A DNA stretch of 64,000 nucleotides, taken from the sequence record MW879344.1; one strand, given 5' to 3'. The notes beneath the pieces were generated by a model. The model saw only the letters and a list, made by a program, of their open reading frames with translations. It was not told where the DNA came from and made no database searches. Of the stretch, positions 2,171 to 61,001 are shown piece after piece. The first letter of the stretch is position 1. Every line of letters begins with the position of its first letter. The translations under genes and the position numbers were made by a program.

Positions 2171-2229
2171 TTACAACGGGGAGTTCTAGAACTCCCCGAT
2201 CTTTTAAGTAAACAGCGAGATTAAAATCC

Positions 2230-29330: not shown

Positions 29331-29449
29331 CGGGAATTGGTGTAATGGCAGCACAACGTTATAACATAAATTCTTGTACAGGAATTTCACAGCAACCAAT
29401 ACAATTGCATAGGGAGCCGTGAGATAAGGTTCGATTCCTTGATTCCCGA
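29331..29449 (+). ncRNA. tRNA-like RNA with ACAGCAA-helix insert in anticodon arm (TTGCATA loop)
   Basis: CGGGAAT/ATTCCCG acceptor, D and T arms, AAATTC/GAATTT helix, ACAGCAA at 29389. Confidence 0.75.
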
Positions 29450-42409: not shown

Positions 42410-42485
42410 GCCTTTGTAGCTCAGTTGGTAGAGCGGGAATCTCTAAAATTCTTTGTCGTCGGTTCGAGTCCGACCATCGGCACCA
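42410..42485 (+). tRNA. amber suppressor tRNA (anticodon CUA)
   Basis: GGAAT-CT-CTA-AA-ATTCT anticodon arm, canonical D/T arms, ACCA end; two mismatches in acceptor stem. Confidence 0.85.
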
Positions 42486-47662: not shown

Positions 47663-47778
47663 GCAGTGATCGTCTAGAGGCTTAGGACACGAAAAAGCGA
47701 TTCTTGGTTAAGAATCTTACGGCATCAATAAACTTTCATTTCACGAACGTAACGCAGGTTCGAATCCTGCTCACTGCA
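47663..47778 (+). tRNA. tRNA-Glu(UUC)-like gene interrupted by 43-nt helix/ACGGCA insert (47692-47734)
   Basis: Glu-type D arm GTCTAGAGGCTTAGGAC; CG|TTC-ATTTCAC-GAACG stem restored on removing the insert. Confidence 0.8.
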
Positions 47779-48108: not shown

Positions 48109-48234
48109 GTGGGGTTAGCTCAGTCTGGTAGAGCAGCGAAAGAAAAAACAATGGAATCTTGAAAAGGATTCTAACAGCATTATATCTTCTACTGTAAATT
48201 CGCAGGTCGGTGAGTTCGAATCCACCATCCCACA
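48109..48234 (+). tRNA. tRNA-Tyr(GUA)-like gene interrupted by 51-nt helix/ACAGCA insert (48141-48191)
   Basis: GCGAA|CT-GTA-AA-TTCGC; short variable loop; bulged T stem. Confidence 0.7.
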
Positions 48235-48948: not shown

Positions 48949-49305
48949 ATGAAAGTTTATGTAGATGATATTCGTAATCCACAAAACCATCTAAGTTCTG
49001 AACAGGCAGCCGATGTAGTATGGATTAAAGAATGGTGGGATGCACGTAACTTTATCTTTTATAATAATTTAGAAATTGAAGTGATTCATTTAGATAATTA
49101 TCTAGGTGACCGTACCCACACTGGGGCTGATTTACTTCAAATGATTACATATAGGTTTCGCCGTGGGGAATTCCCTAAGTTGAAACAAATTTATCTTCAC
49201 AGTTCTGATAAAGATATTGTGAATAAACTGTATGACAAACATATTGAACGTTGTACAGAAGCTGGTGTTGAATTAATTAAAAATTCACGTCCAAACCGTA
49301 GTTAA
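48949..49305 (+). CDS. cyclic-phosphate-processing receiver-like domain protein, copy 2
   Basis: VYVDDIRNP...IHLDNYLG..TGAD...IYLHSS; tandem paralog. Confidence 0.65.
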   Translation: MKVYVDDIRNPQNHLSSEQAADVVWIKEWWDARNFIFYNNLEIEVIHLDNYLGDRTHTGADLLQMITYRFRRGEFPKLKQIYLHSSDKDIVNKLYDKHIERCTEAGVELIKNSRPNRS

Positions 49306-49311
49306 ACAAAT

Positions 49312-49433
49312 GGCGAGTTAGCTCAGTTGGTAGAGCAGGAAAAAAACCGATTCTTGTATTGAATCGTACAGCAAACAATACTATTGCACTTTTAATGCCC
49401 TTGTCGGGGGTTCAATTCCCTCACTCGCCACCA
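49312..49433 (+). tRNA. tRNA-Lys(UUU) gene interrupted by 46-nt helix/ACAGCAA insert (49340-49385)
   Basis: removing the insert gives GG|GCA-CTTTTAA-TGCCC, a perfect 76-nt cloverleaf with ACCA. Confidence 0.85.
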
Positions 49434-49441
49434 AAACATCA

Positions 49442-49493
49442 AATATTCGAACCTATATGATAAATAAAAATAAATTATATAGGTTCGAATATT
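49442..49493 (+). promoter_or_regulatory. 17-bp inverted repeat enclosing late-promoter word and occluding HNH RBS
   Basis: AATATTCGAACCTATAT / ATATAGGTTCGAATATT, GATAAATA in loop, ATG at 49494. Confidence 0.75.
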
Positions 49494-50105
49494 ATGAATA
49501 TATGTTTACAATGTAATCAAGAAATTGATGATAAGAAAAAGTTTTGTAATAAATCTTGTGCGGCAAAGTACAATAATTCTCATAGAATATTGTCGGAAGA
49601 AACAAAATCTAAAATTTCTAAATCTTTAAAAGATCGAGAAGCTAAATTTATTGAAACTGAAAATGTTAAGGCTGGTAGACTTCGAGCAGGTGCAAAACGT
49701 AGTGAATATGCGATTGGAAAATTATTATCTGATGATTTTGAATCATTAAGTGTTATAAGAAAGAAAAAACGTGTAAAAATGGAACAAGATAATAAATGTT
49801 TAATATGTGATTTATCTGAATGGCGTGGTTCTTTATTAACATTGGAAGTAGATCATATAGATGGAAATAACATGAATAATAGTAGAGATAATTTAAGAGC
49901 TTTATGTCCTAATTGTCATTCACAAACTGAAACGTGGCGTGGGAAAAATAGTAAAAAAGTTATTTCAGATGAACTTTTAATTGAGATTATTTCAGTTTCT
50001 TCATCTATTGCAGAAGTTATTCGAAATACCAATATGTCTAAATCAAAAACTTCGTATAATAAAATCCGTGCTATTATGGAAATGAATAAACTATCATTTA
50101 ACTAA
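49494..50105 (+). CDS. HNH homing endonuclease
   Basis: CLQC..FCNKSC finger; LEVDHIDGNNMNN..DNLRALCPNCH. Confidence 0.9.
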   Translation: MNICLQCNQEIDDKKKFCNKSCAAKYNNSHRILSEETKSKISKSLKDREAKFIETENVKAGRLRAGAKRSEYAIGKLLSDDFESLSVIRKKKRVKMEQDNKCLICDLSEWRGSLLTLEVDHIDGNNMNNSRDNLRALCPNCHSQTETWRGKNSKKVISDELLIEIISVSSSIAEVIRNTNMSKSKTSYNKIRAIMEMNKLSFN

Positions 50106-50310
50106 GGTATAATTATGTTCCTTGATGAAATTAAATCTGTTCCATTCCCAAGCTATAAAGCTTTGGAAAAATCACGTAACGAATCGTCTAAGTCTGTTAA
50201 TCCAACAACTTATGATCGTTATGAAAAGTACCATTATCCTGCTGGTACAGAATTACGTTTAGCAAAAGCTATTGATTCTGTAATTGTAAAAATTAAAAAG
50301 GTAATTAACT

Positions 50311-50721
50311 ATGTCGGTTAAATTCACACCAGTAGTAACTACATTGAAAAATACACTTGTTGTTGAATTGGAATACGAGCATGGTGATGCAGATGCAACT
50401 ACCTTTGAATATGTAAATATTCCAGTACTTCCTGAACAAAAAGAAAGTATTGGTGTGTTACTTTCAATGATTGAGCACGGTCTTGAATGTCAAAATGCTG
50501 AACGTTATGATGAAGATAGTGATCCAGTATTTGAAGATGACACTGTTTCATTATTAGTAATGGACGGTGGCGAAATTAGCTTTACATATAATGGTATTAA
50601 TGTTAACATTGGCAATGTTGGTGATTGTACCGTTGATGGTCAATTTAATGCATCGGGCGGTATTAATGCGGTTTATTACTACGATGAAAATGCTATTAAA
50701 TACAGTGTAACTGAATATTAA
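50311..50721 (+). CDS. hypothetical protein
   Basis: ORF track. Confidence 0.6.
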   Translation: MSVKFTPVVTTLKNTLVVELEYEHGDADATTFEYVNIPVLPEQKESIGVLLSMIEHGLECQNAERYDEDSDPVFEDDTVSLLVMDGGEISFTYNGINVNIGNVGDCTVDGQFNASGGINAVYYYDENAIKYSVTEY

Positions 50722-50928
50722 AATTTGCGGGAACGCTTGACAAACTGCCAAAGACCCCGCTATAATAGAGGGGTTCTTTATGAAGCATTATTATGATGTA
50801 TTAGTGACGGTAGTTGTCTTATTCGGTCTTGCAACTTGTTTGTTTAAAAGTATAATTGTGGCATTTATTGGAATAGCAATATTCTTTTTAGGATGCCTTG
50901 TTGAATATCTTATCAATAGGAACAAAAC

Positions 50929-51270
50929 ATGAAACACTTCTTGGAAGTACTGTTCGTAGCAATTGCAATTTTGGCGGGTTTATTAGGTCACGTTGGTCTT
51001 GCGATTTGGGCAGGTATGTTTGGTGTGATTATGTGGTTTATTATCCCAAATCCAACGTACCAACCACAAGTTCCTGTAGTACCAAAAATTAATGGTATTG
51101 AAGTGGAATTTAAATATCGTTCAGATGAAGAAGGTAAAACGTTCACCATCGTTGTGCCAAATAATGGTGATGAAGAAATTGTTAATGTGGTTAAGTACAT
51201 TAACAATTTAACAGGTACAGAAACCTCGGCTGAACGTTTAGAGATTTTATCTACTAGGTACTTAATTTAA
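50929..51270 (+). CDS. membrane protein
   Basis: two N-terminal TM segments. Confidence 0.6.
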   Translation: MKHFLEVLFVAIAILAGLLGHVGLAIWAGMFGVIMWFIIPNPTYQPQVPVVPKINGIEVEFKYRSDEEGKTFTIVVPNNGDEEIVNVVKYINNLTGTETSAERLEILSTRYLI

Positions 51271-51314
51271 AAGTACTTTAATAGTGAAAGCCCTTATTAA
51301 AGGGCTTTTTAATT

Positions 51315-51400
51315 GGGGATATGGCGAAATTGGTAAGACGCACCACACTCAAAATGTGGCGGTTTAATCCGTGTCGGTTCGACTCCGACTATCCCCACCA
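51315..51400 (+). tRNA. tRNA-Leu(CAA)
   Basis: class II cloverleaf, CT-CAA-AA, ACCA. Confidence 0.95.
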
Positions 51401-51600
51401 AAAAAAAAAGATTGACAGTGCTACAAATTTTAAGTAAGATAGAGTCATTGAGTTCAGCAAGTTTAAAAAATCTTTAAAAAACTGCTTGACAAGTGATTAC
51501 AAATTCGATACTATGTATCACATCGACGGATGTAAAACGTATCTCTTGGTACTCAACGTTGAGTACTGTTTTAGAAAATAATATATAAGGGCTTTAAAAA

Positions 51601-51822
51601 ATGGCTAAGAACACTATTACTGATATTGGCGAAGTTGAACGTACTGTGAACTACATCAAGTTCCAGATCTCTCAAGCTGACGAACAGCTTGCTCCATTCG
51701 CTAACAGCGATAAGCCAAAGATCTGCTATGCACATCTGTTGGATTGGAAAAAACAGTTGCAGTCTGAACTGTATGAAATCCGTCAGGCTCAGCAGAAAGC
51801 ACGTCACAACACGCACAAGTAA
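51601..51822 (+). CDS. small early protein
   Basis: two sigma70 promoters upstream (about 51412, 51487). Confidence 0.65.
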   Translation: MAKNTITDIGEVERTVNYIKFQISQADEQLAPFANSDKPKICYAHLLDWKKQLQSELYEIRQAQQKARHNTHK

Positions 51823-51882
51823 TGAGCCATGCCGCTAACATCGTTAGCGGCGTCTTTTAAGTGATAAAAAGAGTATAAAAAT

Positions 51883-52125
51883 ATGAAAAGTGCAACTACT
51901 TTAAAGAACATGCATACTCGCATTGAGTTACTTAAATCACAACGTGATTTAGCATGGATTGAATGGCATAAGTTAAATGATTTGGAACAGCGTAACAAAG
52001 AGCAAGGTAAAGCATTGTCTCAAACTTTCGCCCTTATCACTAAACTGACATATGAAATTCGCGGTCTGCAAATCACCTTTGGTGAACTGAAAGAACAAGT
52101 CATCAAAGAAATCATTTTGTCTTAA
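51883..52125 (+). CDS. small coiled-coil protein
   Basis: ORF track. Confidence 0.55.
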   Translation: MKSATTLKNMHTRIELLKSQRDLAWIEWHKLNDLEQRNKEQGKALSQTFALITKLTYEIRGLQITFGELKEQVIKEIILS

Positions 52126-52141
52126 CTAAAATGGGGTTGTT

Positions 52142-52603
52142 ATGGGTGCAATTATTCTGTACAGTATTTTAGGTTTTCTCGGTGTATTCACTTTGTATAT
52201 GTTCGTTGTAACATCTGCAATGGGTACTGAACGTTTAAAAACTTCACAGTACTTTATGTCTTCATTAAGTTATAGTGAAGAAGCTACAGTAAAAATCAAT
52301 CTTTTGATTGATAAGTATCAAGCTGGCTTACTTAAAGCTAAGCTTAAATCAAATGTTATAGAATTCACCGAAATGGAAGGTAATGCACTGGCTGGTGAGA
52401 TTTATATTGCAAATAAGTACTTCTCGTATGGTCAGTTGTATCGTTATGGTGCAAATGGAAATACTAAGTGGCAATGCAATAAACCAGATTTAAAAACTTT
52501 CAAGCGTATTATTAAACTTGAAAAACAACTTGATATTACTGATGAAGTTCCAGTACAAAAAAGTACTAGTAAGTCATCAGAAGAACAGGTTATTCTGGAC
52601 TAA
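52142..52603 (+). CDS. membrane-anchored hypothetical protein
   Basis: N-terminal TM. Confidence 0.6.
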   Translation: MGAIILYSILGFLGVFTLYMFVVTSAMGTERLKTSQYFMSSLSYSEEATVKINLLIDKYQAGLLKAKLKSNVIEFTEMEGNALAGEIYIANKYFSYGQLYRYGANGNTKWQCNKPDLKTFKRIIKLEKQLDITDEVPVQKSTSKSSEEQVILD

Positions 52604-52639
52604 GGGCAGTAATGCCCTATTTTAATTGAGAGATTTAAT

Positions 52640-53323
52640 ATGAATATCATTGAACGAGCAAAACATATTGTTTCCGTTTCTGAATTTGAAAGTAATGTTA
52701 ATCCAATAGAAATGAAAAAGATTAAAGCAGTTTGTCCATACGATGAACAATATATTTTACGTATGGTGGTAAGTACCGATGGTTTGACCTATCACTTACC
52801 TATTGAATTACGATGGATGTATCCATTGTATATTGCAGCTTTAAAACATCAAACTGAAGTAATTGGGATAAAACATCCGTTTTGTTATATTACTGTTCGT
52901 CATGGTTTAGTTAAATCAATAACTGATGACGAATGGCACGTTGATGGATTCAGTACTAAAATTGTTCATGTACCTGAACAGAACTACATTTGGTCTAACA
53001 GTATTCCTACCGAATACACCAATGTTTCTGTTAAGTTCCCTGATGATTTTGATTCTAATATTCATAATGTGAATCATTACTTACAAAAGTTTGTCCATAA
53101 TGATGAAGTTCAGCAGTGTAAAGAAAATGTGTTGTATTGTTTAGACCCATATATCTTACATCGTCGTCCATCATCAAGTACTGGTGAAGTACGTACTTTT
53201 GTTCGTATCTCATTTGTTCCAATTGAAATCAATGATGTTAATAACACCCAAAATAAGTTATTACCACGTACTTATAACAACGATGGGGTTCAAGTACGAA
53301 ATAAATTGAGAACGTATGGCTAA
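52640..53323 (+). CDS. 2OG-Fe(II) oxygenase-like protein
   Basis: WHVDG...ILHRRP...RTFVRISF (HxD...H...R pattern). Confidence 0.6.
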   Translation: MNIIERAKHIVSVSEFESNVNPIEMKKIKAVCPYDEQYILRMVVSTDGLTYHLPIELRWMYPLYIAALKHQTEVIGIKHPFCYITVRHGLVKSITDDEWHVDGFSTKIVHVPEQNYIWSNSIPTEYTNVSVKFPDDFDSNIHNVNHYLQKFVHNDEVQQCKENVLYCLDPYILHRRPSSSTGEVRTFVRISFVPIEINDVNNTQNKLLPRTYNNDGVQVRNKLRTYG

Positions 53324-53729
53324 AATTATTTGTGGATTTCCTGGTATAGGTAAGAGTAGTATTAAAAATATCGGCAAAGTACTTGATTTGGATAGTTCTT
53401 TGTATACCAAGAATTCTTTATTTCCTGCTAATTATATTGTTGATATTGTATCTGCAATGGATGAATATGATTATATTTTGGTAAGTACGCATGACGTACT
53501 TAGAAAAGAATTACAATCAATGGGTATTAGTTATACTAATGTATATCCAGAGATTGATTTAGGTGAAGAATACCACGACCGTTATGTTCAACGCGGAAGT
53601 CCTGAAAGTTTTATTAATTTTATTGATGAAAATTGGGATGACTTCATATACGAATTGCAGTATGATGATTCTGAATATGTTGAACTGGAAAGCGGTCAAT
53701 TTCTTTCAGATATTATAGCAAATATTTGA
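53316..53729 (+). CDS. small P-loop kinase-like protein
   Basis: IICGFPGIGKSS..VLDLDSS. Confidence 0.65.
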   Translation: MAKIICGFPGIGKSSIKNIGKVLDLDSSLYTKNSLFPANYIVDIVSAMDEYDYILVSTHDVLRKELQSMGISYTNVYPEIDLGEEYHDRYVQRGSPESFINFIDENWDDFIYELQYDDSEYVELESGQFLSDIIANI

Positions 53730-53755
53730 AACGAAAGAAAAAATTGTGGTATAAT
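53727..53755 (+). promoter_or_regulatory. TGAAAC-N17-TATAAT promoter
   Basis: exact motif, precedes permuted tRNA-like RNA. Confidence 0.7.
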
Positions 53756-53772
53756 ATAGTACATAAGGCAAC

Positions 53773-53889
53773 GGAATCTTACAGCAAAAATACTAATTTT
53801 TGATGAAAACGAAACGACGAGGTTCGAATCCTCACCCACGAATTGCCTTATTATTAGTGGGAGCACGGTGCTGGATAAACAAAGATTCC
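53773..53889 (+). ncRNA. circularly permuted tRNA-like RNA (YrlA/Y-RNA-like) 1
   Basis: GGAATCT-T-ACAGCAA...T-arm GAGG-TTCGAAT-CCTC, CCCAC/GTGGG closed acceptor, AGCA-CGG-TGCT, AGATTCC. Confidence 0.75.
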
Positions 53890-53910
53890 AGAATTTAAGT
53901 TAGAAAATTA

Positions 53911-53939
53911 TGAAACAAATCAAAAATTTGTGGTATAAT
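53911..53939 (+). promoter_or_regulatory. TGAAAC-N17-TATAAT promoter
   Basis: exact motif. Confidence 0.7.
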
Positions 53940-53951
53940 ATAAGAAGTAAA

Positions 53952-54059
53952 GCGGGATGGTGATTGATGAAAGCTATTATTTGATTCTAGAAAATCATAA
54001 TAAGCGAGTAAGAGAACAGGGTTCTTAATATCACGAGGGTTCGATCCCCTGTCGCTGCA
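53952..54059 (+). ncRNA. aberrant tRNA-like RNA
   Basis: T-arm GAGGG-TTCGATC-CCCT and imperfect acceptor; two internal hairpins replace D/anticodon arms. Confidence 0.45.
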
Positions 54060-54072
54060 CAAAGCAACAAAC

Positions 54073-54190
54073 GAAATCTCACAGCAAACAAAACAATTTT
54101 TTTCCTTGCATAGAAAAACGGTGGGGTTCGATTCCCCAACATCCAAGTTGCTTTTAGGATGTGTCTGGAAGGCCGTATGACAAAGATTTC
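54073..54190 (+). ncRNA. circularly permuted tRNA-like RNA 2 (TTGCATA loop)
   Basis: GAAATCT-C-ACAGCAA, GGGG-TTCGATT-CCCC, CATCC/GGATG, AGATTTC. Confidence 0.75.
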
Positions 54191-54366
54191 AGTTCCTATC
54201 AACTAAAAAGGATAGCATATAATGAGTTCTGAAGAAAATTTAGAATTATTAAATAAAATAATGAATGCCATTGCAAATGGTAAGTTGAATGAAACAATGA
54301 CTGAACTTGGTTACGAAGTAACTAAGAGTACTGATAAAAGTACAGAATGGTCATTAAAACAATAAT

Positions 54367-54440
54367 GTTCTGTTAGACAAATTGGTAAAGTCACCACCCT
54401 TTCAAGGTGGGGTTTACGGGTTCGACCCCCGTACAGAACG
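54367..54440 (+). tRNA. tRNA-Glu(UUC)
   Basis: cloverleaf, CT-TTC-AA. Confidence 0.9.
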
Positions 54441-54444
54441 CTAA

Positions 54445-54556
54445 AGGATTCGCACAGCAACAATAAAATCTTAAAATTCAATTGGTGAAAACAACCTTGC
54501 AGTTCGATTCTGCTTCCACAATGCGTGGATCTGGTCGATAGAAAAAACCGAATCCT
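54445..54556 (+). ncRNA. circularly permuted tRNA-like RNA 3
   Basis: AGGATTCG-C-ACAGCAA, GCAG-TTCGATT-CTGC, TCCAC/GTGGA, CGAATCCT. Confidence 0.72.
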
Positions 54557-54594
54557 GATTTTAATTAAGAAGTACTAAAGAATTTGATACACAC

Positions 54595-54747
54595 GGATTT
54601 ATACAGCAAACATAATCCTAAAATAAAACATACGATAATGTTACTAACTCGGAATTCGTTCCCTTCGTTAGTACTTGGCAACTTGGGTACTTAAATAAGT
54701 TGTATCACCTCACGTGTATCGGATTAGAGGTGATTATAAATAAATCC
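54595..54747 (+). ncRNA. derived member of the ACAGCAA family (permuted type) 4
   Basis: GGATTTA-T-ACAGCAA ... TAAATCC; AACAT/ATGTT, ACTAAC/GTTAGT, ATCACCTC/GAGGTGAT helices. Confidence 0.6.
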
Positions 54748-54783
54748 AGTAACACAAAAGTACCTTGAACGGTACTTTTTTAT

Positions 54784-54876
54784 GGTAGGTTGGCAGAGTT
54801 TGGCTTATTGCACTTGTCTTGAAAACAAGCGGGGGTTAACAGCCCTCCGAGGGTTCAAATCCCTCACCTACCTCCA
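54784..54876 (+). tRNA. tRNA-Ser(UGA)
   Basis: class II cloverleaf, CT-TGA-AA, CCA. Confidence 0.95.
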
Positions 54877-54887
54877 ATACAATAAAG

Positions 54888-55205
54888 GTGAACATGATGG
54901 ATTCAGTTGGTTTAATCGTTGTGTTTTTAGAACAACGTGTTCGTGGTTCTAATGAAATGCATTATGTAGTACAAGTTACTGAAGAAGGAACTTGTGACGT
55001 TCATGTTACTGACTCATGGAGTTTTAAGTCATGGGAAGATTTAAAAGAAACGCATCCTACTTTCAAAAGTTTGTTATATGAATTTTTTAATTCTTGCAAT
55101 TGGGCACCTTATGTAAACGAAAAAGAAATTTGGGCTGATGAAGTAATCGGCGGCGAAGGTCTTTATGATGATGATGATTCACATGTATTAAGTACTGATT
55201 TGTAA
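54888..55205 (+). CDS. hypothetical protein
   Basis: ORF track. Confidence 0.55.
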   Translation: MNMMDSVGLIVVFLEQRVRGSNEMHYVVQVTEEGTCDVHVTDSWSFKSWEDLKETHPTFKSLLYEFFNSCNWAPYVNEKEIWADEVIGGEGLYDDDDSHVLSTDL

Positions 55206-55213
55206 AGTTCAAT

Positions 55214-55288
55214 GGGGTACGTAGCTCAGTCTGGTAGAGCAGCCATGCGAAAACGGTGTGTCGGTGGTTCGAATCCACTCGCTCCCCA
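55214..55288 (+). tRNA. degenerate tRNA (Phe GAA-like, probable pseudo-tRNA)
   Basis: good D and T arms, mismatched acceptor and anticodon stems. Confidence 0.5.
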
Positions 55289-55292
55289 CTAA

Positions 55293-55349
55293 GGAATCTA
55301 GCAGCAACCATAACCCAATCAAACTTTTAATTTGACAATTATGGATTCC
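55293..55349 (+). ncRNA. mini ACAGCAA-family RNA carrying only a Lys(UUU) anticodon stem-loop
   Basis: GGAATCT-A-GCAGCAA ... TCAAA-CTTTTAA-TTTGA ... GGATTCC. Confidence 0.8.
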
Positions 55350-55527
55350 CGTTATTTTTAAGGATGTGATATGTCTAAAGAACAAGATGAATTTGAAAAA
55401 GAATATCTTATAAGTAAGCGTATTGATCCAAAAGCAACATTTTATATAAAATCTCGTAGAAAGAAAAATGGTTATAGAACTCGTGAATTGAATAATAAAT
55501 TTCAAGAATTTCTTAAACGATTTAAAG

Positions 55528-55619
55528 GGTAAAGTGGCAGAGCGGCTGAATGCAACCGCTTGGAAAGCGGTCAGGTTAGGTAATCCCTAGCCTCGTAGGT
55601 TCAAATCCTATCTTTACCG
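55528..55619 (+). tRNA. tRNA-Ser(GGA)
   Basis: class II cloverleaf, TT-GGA-AA. Confidence 0.93.
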
Positions 55620-55671
55620 CAAAGTAATAACTCCTTATTAAAGTGAAGTACAAAAACAATAGGAGAATATT

Positions 55672-56028
55672 ATGTACGAGAAAGATGATGGTCCATTAAC
55701 TGATGAACAAATTCGTATCATCCGTGAAATGAATAGCCATCTGAATCAAACTGATTTAGAAATTGATTTAAATTGGTTGAACAGTGATATACAAGGAAAT
55801 GCAATGTATTACGACTATTATTACAAAGTTGACGGTGATCTTCGTCGTTATACCAGTAATCAAGAGTTAACGGATGCGGAAATCAATAATATTTTTGGTG
55901 CAAGCAAACAAGTAGTAATGCTTACTCCAATTGTATTTGAACGTGACGTAACTACTGAAGACAAATCTGGTAAAAAGATTAAAAGTACTGAAAAAGTACA
56001 TGTTGGCTTCTTAGGATATGTGGAATAA
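55672..56028 (+). CDS. hypothetical protein
   Basis: AGGAG RBS. Confidence 0.55.
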   Translation: MYEKDDGPLTDEQIRIIREMNSHLNQTDLEIDLNWLNSDIQGNAMYYDYYYKVDGDLRRYTSNQELTDAEINNIFGASKQVVMLTPIVFERDVTTEDKSGKKIKSTEKVHVGFLGYVE

Positions 56029-56030
56029 AA

Positions 56031-56717
56031 ATGTCAAAAAAGACTGATAAAGAAGTAAAAGATACAAAAGAAAAGTACACTGTTGTTAAACACGGTTCAC
56101 TAACACTAGTGAATACACCAACAGTAAAAACTTTCTATATGAATGGTTCTATTGATCATCCTACATTAACTAAGTTCCAAAAGTTCTTAGAAGATACATG
56201 TACGGAAAATAATAAAATTGATACCGAAGAAACTGAACGCAAAGAAAAGGATGAATTTAAAAAGATTCATGATCCTGAATCTAAGCCAGAGTTTGTTCCT
56301 GCTAAACGTAAAGTTGAGCGTATCAATCTGGTTATCAATAGTGGTGGTGGTTTAGTTGCAGTAATGCTAGAAGTTGTAGCACTAATGAAAACTTCACCAA
56401 TTCCAATTGATACCTACTGTTTTGGTTCTGCAATGAGTGCAGCTTTCTTTATCTTCTTACATGGCAAACGCCGTTTTGTTGGTGAAGGTGCCTCATTTAT
56501 GACACATAGCATTGGTGCTATGGCATGGGATAATGTACCAAACATGACAATTCGTATGGAGTACTTGGTTAAACAAAACGAGTACGCACAACAGGAAATT
56601 GCTAAACGTACTGGAATTCCTCTTGAAAAATTAAAAGAGAAAGAACATCTCGATTGGTACTTGACTGCTGAAGAAGCGTTAGATGTTAAAATCGGTGAAT
56701 ATTTGATCCGAGATTAA
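56031..56717 (+). CDS. clpP: ClpP-like protease
   Basis: INSGGG, GSAMSAA (catalytic Ser), FMTHS, DWYLTAEEAL. Confidence 0.8.
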   Translation: MSKKTDKEVKDTKEKYTVVKHGSLTLVNTPTVKTFYMNGSIDHPTLTKFQKFLEDTCTENNKIDTEETERKEKDEFKKIHDPESKPEFVPAKRKVERINLVINSGGGLVAVMLEVVALMKTSPIPIDTYCFGSAMSAAFFIFLHGKRRFVGEGASFMTHSIGAMAWDNVPNMTIRMEYLVKQNEYAQQEIAKRTGIPLEKLKEKEHLDWYLTAEEALDVKIGEYLIRD

Positions 56718-56757
56718 ATATAAATTCTGGATTCGAAAGAATCCTTTTTTAAGTGAG

Positions 56758-56988
56758 ATGATTATGGACAATCAACACAAACATATTAAAGGGTATCGTG
56801 ACCTTTCACAAAAAGAAGTGGATGCGATGAATGAGATTAAACAACTGGCTGCCATCGTTGGAGAGTTGATAGAAAAACTTGAAAGTACTGAATCAGTAGA
56901 TAAACGTTGGCTTGCAATTGCAAAGACGGATTTACAAAAAGGATTCATGTCAGCAGTACGAAGTGTGGCTAAACCAGATTCCTTCTAA
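56758..56988 (+). CDS. acb2: Acb2-family cyclic-nucleotide sponge (anti-CBASS)
   Basis: MDNQHKHIKGYRDLSQKEVDAMNEIK...RWLAIAKTDLQKGFMSAVRSVAKPDSF matches the Acb2 pattern. Confidence 0.85.
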   Translation: MIMDNQHKHIKGYRDLSQKEVDAMNEIKQLAAIVGELIEKLESTESVDKRWLAIAKTDLQKGFMSAVRSVAKPDSF

Positions 56989-56997
56989 GGAACAAAG

Positions 56998-57378
56998 ATG
57001 TATACAACGGTTAATCATGCTGATATAATTGATGATATTATAACTGAAATACTTGAAATTTATACATGTCGAGTTGAAATTTATAAAGATGGTCATTTAT
57101 TCACTCAGTACGGGTATAATACTAAACATAATGTGAATTATCATATAAATGTAAAGTACTATAATGATAATCCAAGTAATGGTGATAAAGCGAATAGCTT
57201 AATGGTAGAATTTAAATTTACCAATAGAGTTCCGAAGGGACTGAAAAATCATTACAAGTTATCTATACCTGAAATAACAAGTCTTACAGAAGAACGGCAT
57301 TTTCAATTAATGTTTGTCACTGATGATATGTATTTGGATTATGAAGTTATAAATAAATTACGTACACATATTGTGTAA
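56998..57378 (+). CDS. TEExxFQ-motif family protein
   Basis: LTEERHFQLM. Confidence 0.6.
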   Translation: MYTTVNHADIIDDIITEILEIYTCRVEIYKDGHLFTQYGYNTKHNVNYHINVKYYNDNPSNGDKANSLMVEFKFTNRVPKGLKNHYKLSIPEITSLTEERHFQLMFVTDDMYLDYEVINKLRTHIV

Positions 57379-57389
57379 AAAAAAAGTTT

Positions 57390-57443
57390 TAGAATCTAAC
57401 AGCAATCAAAACTCATTGGATATATGAAAAAAGATAGATTCTA
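57390..57443 (+). ncRNA. mini ACAGCAA-family RNA (TCAT-TGGATAT-ATGA hairpin)
   Basis: TAGAATCT-A-ACAGCAA ... AGATTCTA; abuts tRNA-Ile. Confidence 0.75.
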
Positions 57444-57449
57444 GTATTT

Positions 57450-57522
57450 GGGAATATAATTCAGTTGGTAGAATGCTCGACCGATAATCGAGTCGCCGCT
57501 GGTTCGAGTCCAGCTATTCCCA
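57450..57522 (+). tRNA. tRNA-Ile(GAU), C at position 33
   Basis: cloverleaf, CTCGA-CC-GAT-AA-TCGAG. Confidence 0.85.
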
Positions 57523-57621
57523 CGAAGTAGTTCAGTACTGAAAAATGTACAGTGAAATTATTCAACACTATAGGTAGCACTTTGAATGAATCAGTAAGCC
57601 TATAAGTAACTACAATAAATT

Positions 57622-57750
57622 TGGAATTCAACAGCAATTCACTTACTAAAAACAGCTACCTCACGGTTTGTAGGTTCAAGTCCTACCTTGTACTTTCGAG
57701 TACATGTGGTGAAAATGGTAAACACGGCTGTCCAAAAGAAATGAATTCCA
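57622..57750 (+). ncRNA. circularly permuted tRNA-like RNA 5 (Leu-type D arm, long variable arm)
   Basis: TGGAATTCA-ACAGCAA, ACAGC/GCTGT, GTAGG-TTCAAGT-CCTAC, TGTACT-TTCG-AGTACA, TGAATTCCA. Confidence 0.8.
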
Positions 57751-57802
57751 GTATTAATTAAGACATAAATATTCTTATACACTTTTTTGTAAGGATATAA
57801 TT

Positions 57803-58402
57803 ATGGAAATGAAAAAGTTGATGGAAGATATTTCTGCCATCATGGAAGGACAATTACCTGGTTATTATTATCATGGAAGTTCTGCCCCAATATCAAATTT
57901 TAGTGATGAGTTTGTTGGTAGAGGAAATGATGAATACGGTCCGGGAATATATTTTAGTTCAGTTCCAAATACTTCTATAGGTTATGCAAAAGATGGCGGT
58001 TCTAATGGAATGGTATATCAGTGCGAAATCAATTTAAGAAAAGAACTATCTAAAAAAACTAGAGTTAATAAAGCAGTACTATTAAAATTAATGCAAAATA
58101 CACCTGATGAAGATGCATATACTAACTGGAATGAAAATAAAAATGTTGCTTATAGAACAGCATTACAGGGTTATGTAGATGAAGGTAATATGTATGATGC
58201 GTTAATGGGTGTTTGGTACGATTGGTATAGAGAATATCCTGTTCAATTCGTGCGTTCACTAGTACAGTTAGGATATGATGGATACATATATACTTTTGCA
58301 AGCGGTGAACGTTTTATTATAGTATATAATCCAGCAAGTATAAAAGTTGTAAACACATTCAATCCAGAAGAAGCTATGCAGAAACTGATTGGAAGTGAAT
58401 AA
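57803..58402 (+). CDS. ADP-ribosyltransferase-like (ART-fold) protein, probably late-expressed
   Basis: YYHGS...F...YGPGIYFS..YA...VY pattern; CATAAATA late word upstream. Confidence 0.55.
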   Translation: MEMKKLMEDISAIMEGQLPGYYYHGSSAPISNFSDEFVGRGNDEYGPGIYFSSVPNTSIGYAKDGGSNGMVYQCEINLRKELSKKTRVNKAVLLKLMQNTPDEDAYTNWNENKNVAYRTALQGYVDEGNMYDALMGVWYDWYREYPVQFVRSLVQLGYDGYIYTFASGERFIIVYNPASIKVVNTFNPEEAMQKLIGSE

Positions 58403-58409
58403 TAAGATT

Positions 58410-58529
58410 TGGAATTCAACAGCAAATCATTCTAAACCCGTAGCATGTCGTAGGTTCAAGTCCTACCAGTACTTTCGAGTACTGTAGCTCAGTTGGTAGA
58501 GCAGCCACCTTAAAAAGAAATGAATTCCA
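58410..58529 (+). ncRNA. circularly permuted tRNA-like RNA 6 (canonical class I D arm)
   Basis: T-arm, then CAGTACT-TTCG-AGTACTG acceptor, then TA-GCTC-AGTTGGTA-GAGC D-arm, inside TGGAATTCA/TGAATTCCA. Confidence 0.85.
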
Positions 58530-58560
58530 GTATTAATTAAAACAACATGAGTATAAATCA

Positions 58561-59010
58561 ATGTCTGATAAGCATCAATTTAAAGTAAACATCGGTGATT
58601 GGTCACAAGATGGTCATAATCAATATGATGTTTTAGTTCTTAACAGTACTAAACCAGTAGATGAAGTACAAAAAGCATTTAAAAAAGCTGCAACTGATTT
58701 ACATTTACTAGTAAATGGTCGTTTTCTAATTGCAGATGAATTTGAAGATTGTAGTCTATCTGAAGACCATGCAGAAGTTCTTAAAAATGCAGGTGTAAAA
58801 TTTGATGATTTAGTGTATAATGATGGCGATGATGAAGAACCAAATTATATTATTGAAGGTTCAAGTGATATGACTATCCTTGTGATGCGGATCGCCCAAC
58901 TTGAATTGGACTTTGAATTTGAAATTACGAATGATGCAATTCCGAACTTTAACGGGTTCTGGACAGAAGAACAAATGCCATCAATCGGATATGGTTTGTA
59001 TAACATATAA
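58561..59010 (+). CDS. conserved phage hypothetical protein
   Basis: IGDWSQDGH motif. Confidence 0.65.
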   Translation: MSDKHQFKVNIGDWSQDGHNQYDVLVLNSTKPVDEVQKAFKKAATDLHLLVNGRFLIADEFEDCSLSEDHAEVLKNAGVKFDDLVYNDGDDEEPNYIIEGSSDMTILVMRIAQLELDFEFEITNDAIPNFNGFWTEEQMPSIGYGLYNI

Positions 59011-59019
59011 AACAAGTTT

Positions 59020-59084
59020 TGGAATCTAGCAGCACCCATAAAATGAAATCAACTGTTAATTGAAAAATTCAAAAATGGATTCCA
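59020..59084 (+). ncRNA. mini ACAGCAA-family RNA carrying only an Asn(GUU) anticodon stem-loop
   Basis: TGGAATCT-A-GCAGCAC ... TCAA-CTGTTAA-TTGA ... GGATTCCA. Confidence 0.78.
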
Positions 59085-59103
59085 GCCTATTTCGGAGTAA
59101 AAA

Positions 59104-59373
59104 ATGTATTATGCTCGATTAGAATATCCAAACAATGGATATGAGATTGAAAGAATACGTCTTAAAGCCTTAGATCGCAAAAAGTACTACCCAGTAGTTT
59201 CGATTGATATTGGTAGTTCAAGTACTCGCATATATCTTGAAGGTGATAAGAATGCATATAATAGTGTGAACTTTGAATTCTATACCAAACATGGTGATGA
59301 ATATATTCTTGAAGATATTTTCGAAGACCCTGATTTAAATCCGTACTTGGATGATGATGATGAAGAATATTAA
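59104..59373 (+). CDS. hypothetical protein
   Basis: GGAG RBS. Confidence 0.6.
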   Translation: MYYARLEYPNNGYEIERIRLKALDRKKYYPVVSIDIGSSSTRIYLEGDKNAYNSVNFEFYTKHGDEYILEDIFEDPDLNPYLDDDDEEY

Positions 59374-59393
59374 ATAAAAATACCACAAATAAA

Positions 59394-59422
59394 TGAAACG
59401 CTTCAAAAAATTGTGGTATAAT
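59394..59422 (+). promoter_or_regulatory. TGAAAC-N17-TATAAT promoter
   Basis: exact motif; TACCACAA/TTGTGGTA inverted repeat overlaps. Confidence 0.7.
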
Positions 59423-59441
59423 ATAAGTAAGTTAAACAAGA

Positions 59442-59513
59442 GGTTATGTCGTATAAAGGTTATTACGGAGAGCTGTTAACTCTTTTATCTTGGTTCGATT
59501 CCAAGCATGACCG
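59442..59513 (+). tRNA. tRNA-Asn(GUU)
   Basis: cloverleaf, CT-GTT-AA. Confidence 0.9.
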
Positions 59514-59630
59514 CAAAAAGTTAAATTCACCAGGCGTACTATGGTGGGAAAGGTATCATGATACCAATTCGAATAGAATACGTATTAAACCCTTGAACGG
59601 TTTTCTGTAAACTCAATTTAACAAATAATT

Positions 59631-59685
59631 AAGAATCTAACAGCAATCAAAACTCATTCGATTATATGAAAAAAGATAGATTCTT
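59631..59685 (+). ncRNA. mini ACAGCAA-family RNA (TCAT-TCGATTAT-ATGA)
   Basis: near-duplicate of 57390-57443; abuts tRNA-Gln. Confidence 0.75.
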
Positions 59686-59690
59686 GTTTT

Positions 59691-59763
59691 AGGAGTATGG
59701 TGTAATTGGTTAGCACACGTGACTTTGACTCACGTAGTTGAGGTTCGAGTCCTTATATTCCTG
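59691..59763 (+). tRNA. tRNA-Gln(UUG)
   Basis: cloverleaf, CT-TTG-AC. Confidence 0.9.
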
Positions 59764-59914
59764 CAAATTAAAATTTCATTCATTTCCTTGTGTGAAACAA
59801 GCTGGTATGATTCCCCTTGCTTGTAAAATTATCGAACGGGAACCGCGTTGCACCTGTACAGGTCAGATTGTAAAGATCGAGTATGTACAGTACTGAGAGC
59901 GGCAGTACAATAAA

Positions 59915-59996
59915 GCGGGATTAGCTCAGTGGTAGAGCACTTGCCTTCCAAGCAAGAGGCGAATAGGTTCCATCGGTTCGAATCCGATATTCCGCT
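59915..59996 (+). tRNA. tRNA-Gly(UCC) with 15-nt variable region
   Basis: CTTGC-CT-TCC-AA-GCAAG, U73. Confidence 0.85.
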
Positions 59997-60114
59997 CAAA
60001 CTAAACAAACAATAAGGTGATTTTTATGCTATAGAATCCTAGTACTGGTCCTCCTAAAGAATTTAATTCTGATATAAACAACTCAAAATTAAACTACTAT
60101 AGGAAGAACATACC

Positions 60115-60441
60115 ATGTTAAACAAAGAACAATATATTACTGTAAAAAATACTTGGAAAGCTGTAAAAGAACATAACATTTTTGATCATGTGATCTATAA
60201 TGTACTTCGTGGAGTCCCATCTGATACTGGTTTCGCACCAATTACAGACAGGGGTCGTTTACACGCTAACAACAATGACCCGTTCAATATGTACAATTAC
60301 GCAGTTCGTGAAATTCATTATGAATTAAACGAAAAACGGTACAATTACGAAAAGACAGTAAAGCATTATTCTGAACTATTCGGCATTGAATTTACAAAAG
60401 AACTCATCGAAGAAATTGTTTCTTTGATTAAAGTTAAATAA
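60115..60441 (+). CDS. hypothetical protein
   Basis: ORF track. Confidence 0.65.
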   Translation: MLNKEQYITVKNTWKAVKEHNIFDHVIYNVLRGVPSDTGFAPITDRGRLHANNNDPFNMYNYAVREIHYELNEKRYNYEKTVKHYSELFGIEFTKELIEEIVSLIKVK

Positions 60442-60449
60442 CAGAATTA

Positions 60450-60506
60450 AAGAATCCAGCAGCAACTAAAACTCATTCGCTTAATATGAAAAAGAAACGG
60501 ATTCTT
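60450..60506 (+). ncRNA. mini ACAGCAA-family RNA (TCAT-TCGCTTAAT-ATGA)
   Basis: AAGAATCC-A-GCAGCAA ... GGATTCTT. Confidence 0.72.
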
Positions 60507-60514
60507 GTTTTTAT

Positions 60515-60754
60515 TTGGAAAACGATATGAAACGTAACTACTTCCATTTTGTTACTTTTACTAAACCAAAGGTATCTACAGCTAAAAGTGCAGACGATGT
60601 AGCACAATTAATTGAAGATACTATCAATAAAATGCAAGAAGATGGTGAAAAATATGGAGAAATTCATATTGATATGCCAGAAGACTTAACACCAGAAGAA
60701 CAACAAATGTTCATAGAAGAAATTATGAAACGATTTGGTGGAACTGATGAGTAA
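60515..60754 (+). CDS. small hypothetical protein
   Basis: ORF track. Confidence 0.5.
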   Translation: MENDMKRNYFHFVTFTKPKVSTAKSADDVAQLIEDTINKMQEDGEKYGEIHIDMPEDLTPEEQQMFIEEIMKRFGGTDE

Positions 60755-61001
60755 TTCATTTTATGAAGATTTAAGATTTAGATATATTGAAGTGCTTGAT
60801 TGTCAAGCATATTGTAATCCTGATGAACCTACTAGCAACAAACATTTAGTATGGATGTTATTAGAACTAAGTAATCCTAATATGTCTGAAACAAAGAAAC
60901 ACAGATGGTTAGGATACATACAAGGTTGTATGGTTTCTAAAGGACTAATCAATGTTCAAGAAGAACGTGAATTAACCAGAGATGTATTTCAAGGTAAATA
61001 A
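60735..61001 (+). CDS. conserved phage hypothetical protein
   Basis: KKHRWLGYIQG motif. Confidence 0.65.
   Translation: MVELMSNSFYEDLRFRYIEVLDCQAYCNPDEPTSNKHLVWMLLELSNPNMSETKKHRWLGYIQGCMVSKGLINVQEERELTRDVFQGK

What the first reader, a model, noticed from the sequence alone, without database searches (positions are those of the whole stretch)
53773..58529. Six circularly permuted tRNA-like genes (T-arm, loop-closed acceptor stem, then D-arm)
Seen in sequence: the order is 3' half before 5' half. The clearest case is 58410-58529, with GTAGG-TTCAAGT-CCTAC (T arm), CAGTACT-TTCG-AGTACTG (7-bp acceptor stem capped by a UUCG tetraloop) and TA-GCTC-AGTTGGTA-GAGC (canonical D arm), all inside TGGAATTCA/TGAATTCCA. 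57622-57750 has a Leu-type D arm, a long variable arm and a GCTGT/ACAGC stem. 54073 shares its TTGCATAG loop and linker with the linear element at 29331, so similar cargo exists in both topologies. Established knowledge: this order is the architecture of YrlA Y RNAs; permuted tRNA genes are otherwise known from some algae and archaea. Inference: six diverse copies in 5 kb suggest specialised elbow mimics (T/D loop) that cannot be aminoacylated.
Basis: partly seen in the sequence, partly recalled or inferred. Interest (0 to 1): 0.8.

Follow-up and report, generated by a model that had tools for sequence, protein, structure and literature searches.

The report
Phage Y-like RNAs built from tRNA parts
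The flagged elements are real, conserved, rearranged tRNA look-alikes that all carry one shared stem-plus-ACAGCAA module, and the best reading is that they are Y-RNA-like partners of a Ro60-like protein encoded by this jumbo phage; this RNA family has not been described, also occurs in FelixO1-type phages and cyanophages, and is even inserted into otherwise normal tRNA genes.

Summary
The window is Erwinia jumbo phage pEa_SNUABM_49 (Serratia phage BF-like). Five of the six flagged elements are permuted tRNA-like RNAs (T arm, capped acceptor, D region). They are conserved and covary across five genera. The sixth (54595-54747) is not tRNA-like.

The window holds 14 modules: 6 with long cargo, 4 short, and 4 in hairpin form inside linear tRNA genes. 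In those, and in 11 of 13 such genes overall, removing one 41-51 nt segment restores a perfect anticodon arm.

The phage encodes a DUF2828+DUF7788 protein whose predicted fold matches Ro60 over its full length. It sits two genes downstream of an RNA ligase. In unrelated phages (FelixO1, a Leptolyngbya cyanophage, metagenomic contigs) the same module, with different P1 sequences, lies beside the homologous gene: 9 strict copies in 81 kb against 0 in 200 kb of control DNA.

Best explanation: Y-RNA analogues (YrlA-like) that display tRNA parts on a Ro60-like RNA-repair or anti-defence particle. Rival: a new protein-dependent tRNA intron or permutation signal. Binding and processing are untested.

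The parts
53773..53889 (+). Open-topology module with tRNA-like cargo (class C). P1 is GGAATCTT/AAGATTCC and the core ACAGCAA is at 53781. The cargo holds a hairpin, a T arm, a 5-bp closed acceptor-like stem and a small D-like hairpin.
   Evidence: extended -10 promoter at 53726-53755
54073..54190 (+). Open-topology module with tRNA-like cargo (class D). P1 is GAAATCT/AGATTTC and the core is at 54081. It has a T arm TGGGG/CCCCA and a closed acceptor-like hairpin.
   Evidence: three pair types at one T-stem position and at one acceptor position
54445..54556 (+). Open-topology module with tRNA-like cargo (class E). P1 is AGGATTCG/CGAATCCT. It has a 4-bp T arm and a 5-bp closed acceptor-like stem.
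   Evidence: P1 and T stem covary
54595..54747 (+). Open-topology module whose cargo is not tRNA-like (class F): three hairpins and no T arm.
55293..55349 (+). Short module. P1 is GGAATC/GATTCC and the core variant is GCAGCAA. The cargo is an anticodon-arm look-alike, TCAAA-CTTTTAA-TTTGA (Lys UUU loop).
57390..57443 (+). Short module directly upstream of tRNA-Ile. P1 is TAGAATCTA/TAGATTCTA and the cargo is a 4-bp hairpin.
57622..57750 (+). Open-topology module with a permuted class II (Leu-type) tRNA-like cargo (class B).
   Evidence: 100% of cells paired, 6 pairs with compensatory change
58410..58529 (+). Open-topology module with the most canonical permuted tRNA-like cargo (class A). The anticodon-like stem keeps a conserved C29.A41 mismatch.
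59631..59685 (+). Short module directly upstream of tRNA-Gln.
60450..60506 (+). Short module with core variant GCAGCAA.
29331..29447 (+). Linear tRNA-like gene carrying the module as a hairpin. Excising 48 nt after position 29 gives stem ACGGC/GCCGT and loop ATAGGGA.
47663..47778 (+). Linear tRNA gene with the hairpin module (core variant ACGGCAT) between positions 28 and 29. It reconstitutes CGTTC/GAACG with loop ATTTCAC (Glu UUC).
   Evidence: orthologs
48109..48234 (+). Linear tRNA-like gene with the hairpin module (core variant ACAGCAT). Excising 51 nt after position 30-32 gives GCGAA/TTCGC with loop CTGTAAA (anticodon GUA).
49312..49434 (+). Linear tRNA-Lys(UUU) gene with the 46-nt hairpin module between positions 28 and 29, and an encoded CCA end.

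Best explanation
The elements are non-coding RNAs of one family. Each has a protein-side module: stem P1, formed by the RNA's two ends, followed by an internal loop. The loop has the invariant RCAGCAA on one strand and an A-rich run on the other. Each RNA also has a variable display domain made of tRNA parts: an elbow with capped acceptor, an anticodon arm, or a whole tRNA.

I propose that the module is the binding site of the phage's Ro60-like protein (DUF2828+DUF7788; BF gp180), in the way the end-to-end stem of a Y RNA binds Ro60. The tRNA-derived domain would then recruit or decoy tRNA-recognising proteins, either host tRNA-targeting defence nucleases or the phage's own repair enzymes (Rnl1, Pnkp, Rnl2-type ligase, RlaP, CCA-adding enzyme).

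Shown here: the RNA structures and their conservation, the shared module, the Ro60 fold of the protein, and the genomic association of RNA and protein across unrelated phages.

Inferred: physical binding, the function of the display domains, and the role in RNA repair or counter-defence.
For: (1) Structure: the permuted cloverleaf with P1 is 96-100% paired with compensatory changes. Over all held sequence there are 72 distinct strict modules with 34 different P1 sequences, the same core, and G after P1b in 59 of 72.

(2) Y-RNA likeness: 58443-58505 matches the YrlA tRNA-like domain, and L108:3464-3572 matches the whole YrlA model at 31.4 bits.

(3) Protein: BF gp180 hits DUF7788 (8e-41) and DUF2828 (4e-33). 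The AlphaFold model (pLDDT 85.8) has Ro60/TROVE structures as its top 11 PDB matches (E = 3e-10 to 5e-6, TM about 0.57, full length). The gene is in the window phage at 99.6% identity. It lies two genes downstream of an Rnl2-type ligase, a synteny kept in distant relatives.

(4) Association: modules with unrelated P1 sequences lie beside the homologous gene in other phages. Leptolyngbya phage Lbo-JY46 has five in tandem starting 8 nt after the stop codon. FelixO1 has four in the adjacent tRNA cluster. L126/L127 has one in the upstream gap. L011 has two downstream on the same strand. That is 9 strict modules in 81 kb of such flanks against 0 in 200 kb of control.

(5) Precedent: a phage Ro60 binds adjacent Y-like RNAs (PMC12135203). 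The FelixO1-like Bas63 Ro60-like gp130 counters the Ppl defence, and its authors guessed that some 'tRNA genes' are Y RNAs (PMC11482910).
Against: No binding or expression data are available.

In the window phage the Ro60-like gene is about 150-200 kb from the RNAs, so adjacency holds only in other lineages.

Rfam YrlA scores are below the gathering threshold, and the YrlA Ro-binding stems are not matched in the window copies.

Two sampled Ro60-like loci (Acinetobacter phage ME3, L129) showed no module within 3.5-6 kb.

The association could reflect common residence in tRNA and RNA-repair neighbourhoods rather than direct binding.

Clean restoration of canonical tRNAs on excising the module suggests a splicing role that this model does not require.
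Confidence: 0.62

Rival explanations
1. The module is a new protein-dependent (or ribozyme) tRNA intron and permutation junction, playing the role that the bulge-helix-bulge motif plays in archaea and red algae. An endonuclease would cut at fixed distances either side of P1 and the core. The phage's Rnl1/Pnkp or Rnl2-type ligase would then join the ends. This would splice the linear genes and circularise the permuted ones, which RNase P and the CCA-adding enzyme would finally open.
For: In 11 of 13 linear genes one contiguous 41-51 nt excision restores a 5-bp stem and a 7-nt loop with U33 and R37, against 0.3-1.3% of shuffles.

The cut site is constant: after position 28 in Lys, Ile and Glu genes. 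Anticodon stems covary across the insert, and anticodons switch between orthologs while the loops stay canonical.

Permuted copies in other contigs become canonical Phe and Gln-like tRNAs when joined across P1 (L052, L071).

The phage has Rnl1, Pnkp, a second ligase and a CCA-adding enzyme.
Against: None of the window's six elements gives a canonical anticodon arm, and the class A loop is not conserved between orthologs.

Short modules carry only a hairpin, so nothing could be spliced from them. They place an anticodon-arm look-alike at the same 11-12 nt from the core as the linear genes do, which suggests the arm is displayed rather than spliced.

No endonuclease candidate was found. There is no BHB geometry and no match to any Rfam ribozyme or intron.

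Normal Lys tRNA copies exist in a sister phage (fHe-Yen9-03), so a spliced product may not be needed.
Confidence: 0.22
2. The module is a selfish mobile mini-element that has spread through the tRNA cluster. The permuted and short forms are recombination debris between its copies, with no function of their own.
For: There are many copies with near-identical P1 and core within one genome. Insertion always falls in tRNA genes or their neighbourhood. HNH homing endonuclease genes are scattered through the cluster.
Against: Orthologous copies are kept at syntenic positions across genera that are 75% identical, with compensatory changes in P1 and in the cargo helices.

The core is invariant across unrelated phage lineages whose P1 differs completely.

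The tandem array sits directly after the Ro60-like gene.
Confidence: 0.08
3. The elements are decayed tRNA pseudogenes, or a chance juxtaposition of the 3' half of one tRNA with the 5' half of the next.
For: tRNA arrays could in principle yield such fragments by deletion.
Against: The acceptor strands of the two 'halves' are perfectly complementary and capped by a tetraloop. Helices covary, and slid controls fall to 17-42% pairing. Strong promoters precede the elements.
Confidence: 0.02
4. P1 plus the U-rich tail acts only as a transcript-processing or termination signal that separates mRNAs from tRNAs.
For: Short modules sit directly upstream of tRNA-Ile and tRNA-Gln. The tail after P1b is G followed by a T-rich run. 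In the cyanophage array, units are only 4 nt apart and must be cut apart.
Against: This does not explain the invariant core, the tRNA-derived cargos, the hairpin form inside tRNAs, or the link to the Ro60-like gene. Processing at P1 is compatible with the best explanation rather than opposed to it.
Confidence: 0.06

Closest known systems
YrlA, the bacterial Y RNA with a tRNA-like domain (Rfam RF02553; Chen et al. 2014, PMC4201824)
   Same: The RNA ends pair into a stem next to a large internal loop. The tRNA-like domain follows the order T arm, capped acceptor, D arm. The partner protein has the Ro60 fold. The genomic context is RNA repair with a ligase.
   Different: Scores fall below Rfam's threshold and the Ro-binding helices of YrlA are not matched. 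Here the protein-side module is a short variable stem plus an invariant RCAGCAA core. The partner belongs to Pfam DUF2828/DUF7788 rather than TROVE. There are 10-14 copies per genome with interchangeable cargos. In this phage the RNAs are not next to the protein gene.
Thermus phage phiLo Ro60 with Yrl1/Yrl2 (PMC12135203)
   Same: A phage-encoded Ro60 homolog with phage-encoded Y-like RNAs next to the gene, and a stem-bulge-stem layout with a conserved loop motif.
   Different: That system has two RNAs with a CGAA motif and no reported tRNA-like domain. The system here has a different motif, tRNA-derived cargos and many copies.
Bas63 (FelixO1-like) gp130, a Ro60-like protein that counters the Ppl defence (PMC11482910)
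   Same: By inference the same protein family, based on the Ro60-like fold and the position directly upstream of the tRNA cluster (FelixO1 ORF86 was matched here; Bas63 gp130 itself was not compared). The authors guessed that Y RNAs hide among the tRNA genes.
   Different: No RNA was identified there. Here four module RNAs are located in FelixO1 between the annotated tRNAs.
Circularly permuted and intron-bearing tRNA genes of Cyanidioschyzon merolae and archaea (bulge-helix-bulge system)
   Same: One junction motif serves both interrupted and permuted genes, and joining across it can restore a canonical tRNA (L052, L071 and the linear genes).
   Different: There is no BHB geometry, no splicing endonuclease was found, the host is a bacteriophage, and most permuted copies in this window cannot form an anticodon loop.

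Membership tests
YrlA / bacterial Y RNA (RF02553) | tRNA-like domain in the order T arm, loop-closed acceptor, D arm | tested here: met
   The Rfam alignment covers model positions 24-84. Covariation supports it. It is fully met for 58410 and 57622 and partly met for 53773, 54073 and 54445.
YrlA / bacterial Y RNA (RF02553) | Reaches the family's curated score, including the Ro60-binding stems | tested here: not met
   The best window score is 40.5 bits against a gathering score of 69, and model positions 1-23 and 85-114 are unaligned. L108 aligns over the full length but scores only 31.4 bits.
YrlA / bacterial Y RNA (RF02553) | 5' and 3' ends pair into a stem flanking a large internal loop | tested here: met
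   P1 of 6-9 bp is present in all open copies, with 34 distinct sequences.
YrlA / bacterial Y RNA (RF02553) | Encoded next to a Ro60 (TROVE) gene | tested here: inconclusive
   The window phage has a Ro60-fold gene, but it lies about 150-200 kb away. The same RNA module is adjacent to the homologous gene in Lbo-JY46, FelixO1, L126/L127 and L011. The protein is DUF2828/DUF7788 rather than Pfam TROVE, and is Ro60-like by fold.
YrlA / bacterial Y RNA (RF02553) | Bound by Ro60 in vivo, with tRNA-type modifications | not testable with these tools
   This needs immunoprecipitation and modification mapping.
Permuted tRNA genes (BHB type) | Bulge-helix-bulge motif at the junction of leader and trailer | tested here: not met
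   The inferred junctions lie 6-11 nt before P1b and 8-16 nt after the core, and there is no 3-4-3 bulge-helix-bulge arrangement.
Permuted tRNA genes (BHB type) | Joining the ends gives a canonical tRNA with an anticodon loop | tested here: not met
   None of the window's permuted elements passes the test, although three in other contigs do.
Group I intron in tRNA | Catalytic core of about 200 nt or more, inserted in the anticodon loop | tested here: not met
   The inserts are 41-51 nt and sit in the anticodon stem, and there is no Rfam intron match.
Known small self-cleaving ribozymes (hammerhead, twister, pistol, hatchet, hairpin) | Match to the family's covariance model | tested here: not met
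   No hit at E <= 5 in window positions 49000-61000.
Ro60 / TROVE protein (for the partner protein) | HEAT-repeat ring plus C-terminal vWA domain | tested here: met
   In the Foldseek search the top 11 hits are all Ro60/TROVE structures aligned over the full length. Sequence-profile hits to TROVE structures and Ro60 are only weak (E = 0.13-0.98).

The most novel reading that the evidence does not exclude
The module is a previously unknown kind of tRNA intron and permutation junction in bacteriophages. On this reading a Ro60-like particle holds the pre-tRNA by P1 and the ACAGCAA core. An unidentified nuclease cuts both sides, and the phage ligases reseal the anticodon stem. This would be protein-dependent tRNA splicing and circularisation in a bacterial virus. 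It might keep the anticodon arms of Lys, Glu and Ile tRNAs hidden from host anticodon nucleases until they are needed.
Probability: 0.15. Interest if true: 0.92.

Novelty: new variant of a known kind. Interest (0 to 1): 0.76.

Why it matters
Ro60 and Y RNAs are conserved from bacteria to humans, but how the RNA specifies what the particle acts on is still unclear. This family offers a natural, modular series: one constant protein-side module carrying an elbow, an anticodon arm or a complete tRNA, in 10-14 versions per genome.

The family also occurs in the tractable FelixO1/Bas63 system, where the Ro60-like protein is already known to defeat a bacterial defence (Ppl). That gives a testable route to the missing RNA partners and to the mechanism of that counter-defence.

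It also means that many over-long, pseudo or undetermined tRNA annotations in large phages are module-bearing genes rather than errors. It raises the possibility of protein-dependent tRNA splicing in phages.

Tried and rejected
- **ARAGORN on deletion variants:** the permissive mode called too many of the roughly 1,800 variants per gene to be informative. I replaced it with a strict enumeration using shuffled controls.
- **BHB geometry, group I introns and known small ribozymes:** considered and rejected on spacing, size and the absence of Rfam hits.
- **A dedicated enzyme next to the modules:** an all-against-all blastp between unrelated module-bearing contigs and the Rak2-like tRNA region found no shared candidate. 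The Ro60-like lead came from Pfam annotation of neighbours instead.
- **ART-PolyVal ORF between the two best elements:** considered as a Tpt1-like splicing factor, but there is no evidence for this.
- **Covariance model of the short modules:** abandoned because MAFFT could not keep the 3' strand in register across variable cargos. P1 statistics were computed directly.
- **IMG/VR 14-mer scan:** it returned mostly chance hits and needed structural filtering.
- **Jumbo-phage survey supplements:** not held in the library.
- **Sequence-only search of the protein against PDB:** found nothing for a single sequence and only weak profile hits. The fold comparison was needed.
- **Core pairing with the P1b tail:** the Rfam alignment suggested this, but the cyanophage copies do not support it.

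Full report
**Origin.** The window matches Erwinia phage pEa_SNUABM_49 (MW879344.1, about 248001-312000) at 100% identity. This is a 358-kb Rak2-like jumbo myovirus, 99.5% identical to Serratia phage BF. ARAGORN and Rfam find 20 ordinary tRNAs on the + strand.

**Observation.** The features described for 58410-58529 and 57622-57750 are present exactly as stated.
- The core of 58410 aligns with the tRNA-like domain of Rfam YrlA: model positions 24-84, 40.5 bits, below the gathering score of 69.
- RNAalifold on orthologs from BF-like, Yersinia, GAP32, CBB, XbC2 and Kaldavass phages recovers the outer stem, T arm, capped acceptor and D arm.
- An explicit permuted cloverleaf has 96% (class A) and 100% (class B) of cells paired. 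Slid controls give 17-42%. There are 4 and 6 pairs changed on both sides.
- Class A keeps a C29.A41 mismatch in its anticodon-like stem in all five distinct sequences, from four phage genera.
- Elements at 53773, 54073 and 54445 have covarying T arms and closed acceptor-like hairpins but only rudimentary D regions.
- 54595-54747 has no T arm.

So five elements, not six, are permuted tRNA-like, and two are close to canonical.

**The shared module.** All these elements, and others, begin with a strand of the form GGAATYnn followed directly by ACAGCAA (variants GCAGCAA, ACGGCAT, ACAGCAT). They end with an A-rich run, the complementary strand and a tail beginning with G.
- The window has ten open copies, in which P1 is formed by the two ends. 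Six carry long cargo. The four short ones (54-57 nt) are at 55293, 57390, 59631 and 60450.
- It has four hairpin copies, in which the same two strands are joined by a loop. These lie inside linear tRNA genes at 29331, 47663, 48109 and 49312.
- No GAATC-type module occurs in 150 kb of BF outside the tRNA cluster.
- Strong extended -10 promoters precede the cluster units.

**The linear genes.** I fixed the D-arm end and the T-arm start and enumerated every single contiguous deletion.
- In 11 of 13 module-bearing linear genes from five phages, one 41-51 nt excision leaves a 5-bp stem and a 7-nt loop with U33 and R37. Shuffled versions allow this in only 0.3-1.3% of trials.
- The cut falls after position 28 in five Lys(UUU) genes, one Ile(GAU) gene and the Glu(UUC)/UCA pair. 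It falls after 29 in the window gene at 29331, and after 30-32 in the GUA family.
- Anticodon stems differ between orthologs but stay complementary across the insert (GGGCA/TGCCC, CGAGC/GCTCG, GGCCA/TGGCC, CGACT/AGTCG).
- The insert layout is constant: 6-11 A-rich nt, the P1 hairpin, 0-2 nt, the core, then 8-12 nt.
- The insert is far too small for a group I intron. It has no bulge-helix-bulge geometry and matches no Rfam family.

**Wider distribution.**
- blastn finds the elements only in Rak2-like phages: Eneladusvirus, Mimasvirus and the 121Q-like Salmonella and Klebsiella phages.
- An IMG/VR scan, filtered for a closing P1, finds modules in unrelated contigs of 45-170 kb.
- There, three permuted copies become textbook tRNAs when joined across P1: Phe with loop CTGAAAA, a Gln-like UUG, and one with anticodon AUG. 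None of the window's copies does.
- About a quarter of the short modules carry a 7-nt CT-started loop hairpin that looks like an anticodon arm. It sits 11-12 nt after the core, the same spacing as in the linear Lys genes. The loops include Lys CTTTTAA, Asn CTGTTAA and Cys CTGCAAA.

**The protein partner.**
- In contigs L011/L061/L108 the modules follow, on the same strand, a 593-aa DUF2828+DUF7788 gene and an AAA+ ATPase.
- BF gp180 is a strong member of the same family (DUF7788 8e-41, DUF2828 4e-33). It lies two genes downstream of an Rnl2-type RNA ligase, gp178. The same order, with a CCA-adding enzyme, NUDIX, glutaredoxin and macro-domain genes downstream, is kept in relatives only 50% identical.
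- The window phage has the gene at 99.6% identity.
- An AlphaFold model built from 17 homologs (pLDDT 85.8, pTM 0.83) has as its eleven best PDB matches only Ro60/TROVE structures from Xenopus, human, Deinococcus and Thermus phage. These score E = 3e-10 to 5e-6 and TM about 0.57 over the whole chain. Sequence profiles give only weak hits to the same proteins.
- BF also encodes Rnl1 and Pnkp side by side, an RlaP nucleotidyltransferase, Thg1 and a 2H/Acb1-like protein.

**Association test.** I sampled the neighbourhood of the homologous gene in unrelated genomes.
- In Leptolyngbya phage Lbo-JY46 the stop codon is followed 8 nt later by five tandem modules. Each has a different 7-9 bp P1 and the same ACAGCAA directly after it, and four of the five share the tail GATAA. 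One carries a T arm and two carry Lys-type anticodon-loop hairpins.
- In FelixO1 the gene (ORF86) sits just upstream of the tRNA cluster. Four unannotated modules (P1 AGACCnn/nnGGTCT) lie between the tRNAs, and one is a permuted tRNA-like element.
- In L126/L127 a module with P1 AGGTAAG/CTTACCT fills the 500-nt gap upstream of the gene.
- Under a strict definition there are 9 modules in 81 kb of such flanks, all on the gene's strand. There are none in 200 kb of control phage DNA.
- A permuted copy in L108 aligns to the whole YrlA model.
- Two sampled loci (phage ME3 and L129) showed none nearby.

**Prior knowledge.**
- YrlA RNAs beside TROVE genes were reported in bacteria and some phages (PMC4201824).
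- A Thermus phage Ro60 binds two adjacent Y-like RNAs and host PNPase (PMC12135203).
- In the FelixO1-like phage Bas63, the Ro60-like gp130 counters the Ppl defence. Its authors speculated that some annotated tRNAs are Y RNAs but did not identify any (PMC11482910).
- I found no paper linking DUF2828 proteins to an RNA, and none describing this module or the interrupted tRNAs.

**Mechanism.** The best-supported reading (confidence about 0.6) is that these are Y-RNA analogues. P1 plus the RCAGCAA/A-rich loop would be the handle for the Ro60-like protein. The tRNA-derived domain would specify what the particle meets: tRNA-recognising enzymes of the phage's repair set, or host tRNA-targeting defence nucleases as decoys. 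The shown and inferred steps are listed under the best explanation above.

The main rival (about 0.2) is that the module is a splicing and permutation signal. It explains the clean excision results and the canonical permuted genes elsewhere. It does not explain the short cargo-only copies, the non-canonical window copies, or the lack of a nuclease candidate. The two readings are not exclusive: the particle could hold pre-tRNAs for cut-and-reseal by the neighbouring ligase. Selfish spread, pseudogenes and pure processing signals are disfavoured by covariation, synteny across genera and the invariant core.

**Classification.** The system works like YrlA/Ro60, but the RNAs fail Rfam's YrlA threshold and use a different protein-side module. 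The protein is Ro60-like by fold, not by Pfam TROVE membership. I therefore file it as a new variant of a known kind. The insertion of the module into bona fide tRNA genes at positions 28/29 is the most unusual aspect.

Noticed in passing
window 57803-58402 (+): This 199-aa ORF lies exactly between the two best permuted elements. It is an ART-PolyVal ADP-ribosyltransferase (Pfam PF18760, E = 1.8e-11, with a weaker PARP hit). A homologous ORF lies among the corresponding elements in GAP32 and CBB.
   Followed up: partly
window 53940-54070 (+): A strong extended -10 promoter at 53910-53939 drives about 130 nt that contain a T-arm-like hairpin (AGGG-TTCGATC-CCCT) and a 5-bp end pairing. Neither ARAGORN nor Rfam calls it, and it has no ACAGCAA core. 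It may be another odd tRNA-like RNA.
   Followed up: no
window 56729-56744 (+): The terminator-like hairpin GGATTC-GAAA-GAATCC plus T-run, after the ClpP-like gene, uses the same stem letters as the module's P1.
   Followed up: no
window 42410-42485 (+): This is a tRNA with anticodon CUA (amber-suppressor type; ARAGORN labels it Pyl). It is conserved in the relatives, where it is annotated Sup, Pyl or Sup-CTA.
   Followed up: no
window 56031-56717 (+): A ClpP-family protease gene lies inside the tRNA cluster (Pfam CLP_protease, 1.9e-19).
   Followed up: partly
L011:3028-3358 (-) and L108:4162-4492 (+): The unrelated phage group that carries modules next to its Ro60-like gene also encodes a tmRNA (Rfam, 60-63 bits) in the same cluster.
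   Followed up: no
L040:3068-5897 (-): In another unrelated contig, a linear tRNA with the hairpin module lies a few hundred nt beyond a pair of adjacent genes for a CCA-adding enzyme and an RlaP RNA-repair nucleotidyltransferase.
   Followed up: partly
L001 12346-12459 versus L003 9725-9838: Orthologous module-bearing tRNAs differ in anticodon after excision: UCA (opal-reading) in fHe-Yen9-03 and UUC (Glu) in CBB and the window. Likewise the Lys(UUU) gene of the window is Ile(GAU) in fHe-Yen9-03. Anticodons switch on a conserved tRNA body.
   Followed up: partly
window 59915-59997 (+): tRNA-Gly(UCC) is 83 nt long, so it has an unusually long variable region for a Gly tRNA.
   Followed up: no
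window 2129-2295 (+): This is the only strict module-like match outside the tRNA cluster. It lies in a coding-dense region, lacks the GAATC-type stem, and is probably a chance match.
   Followed up: no
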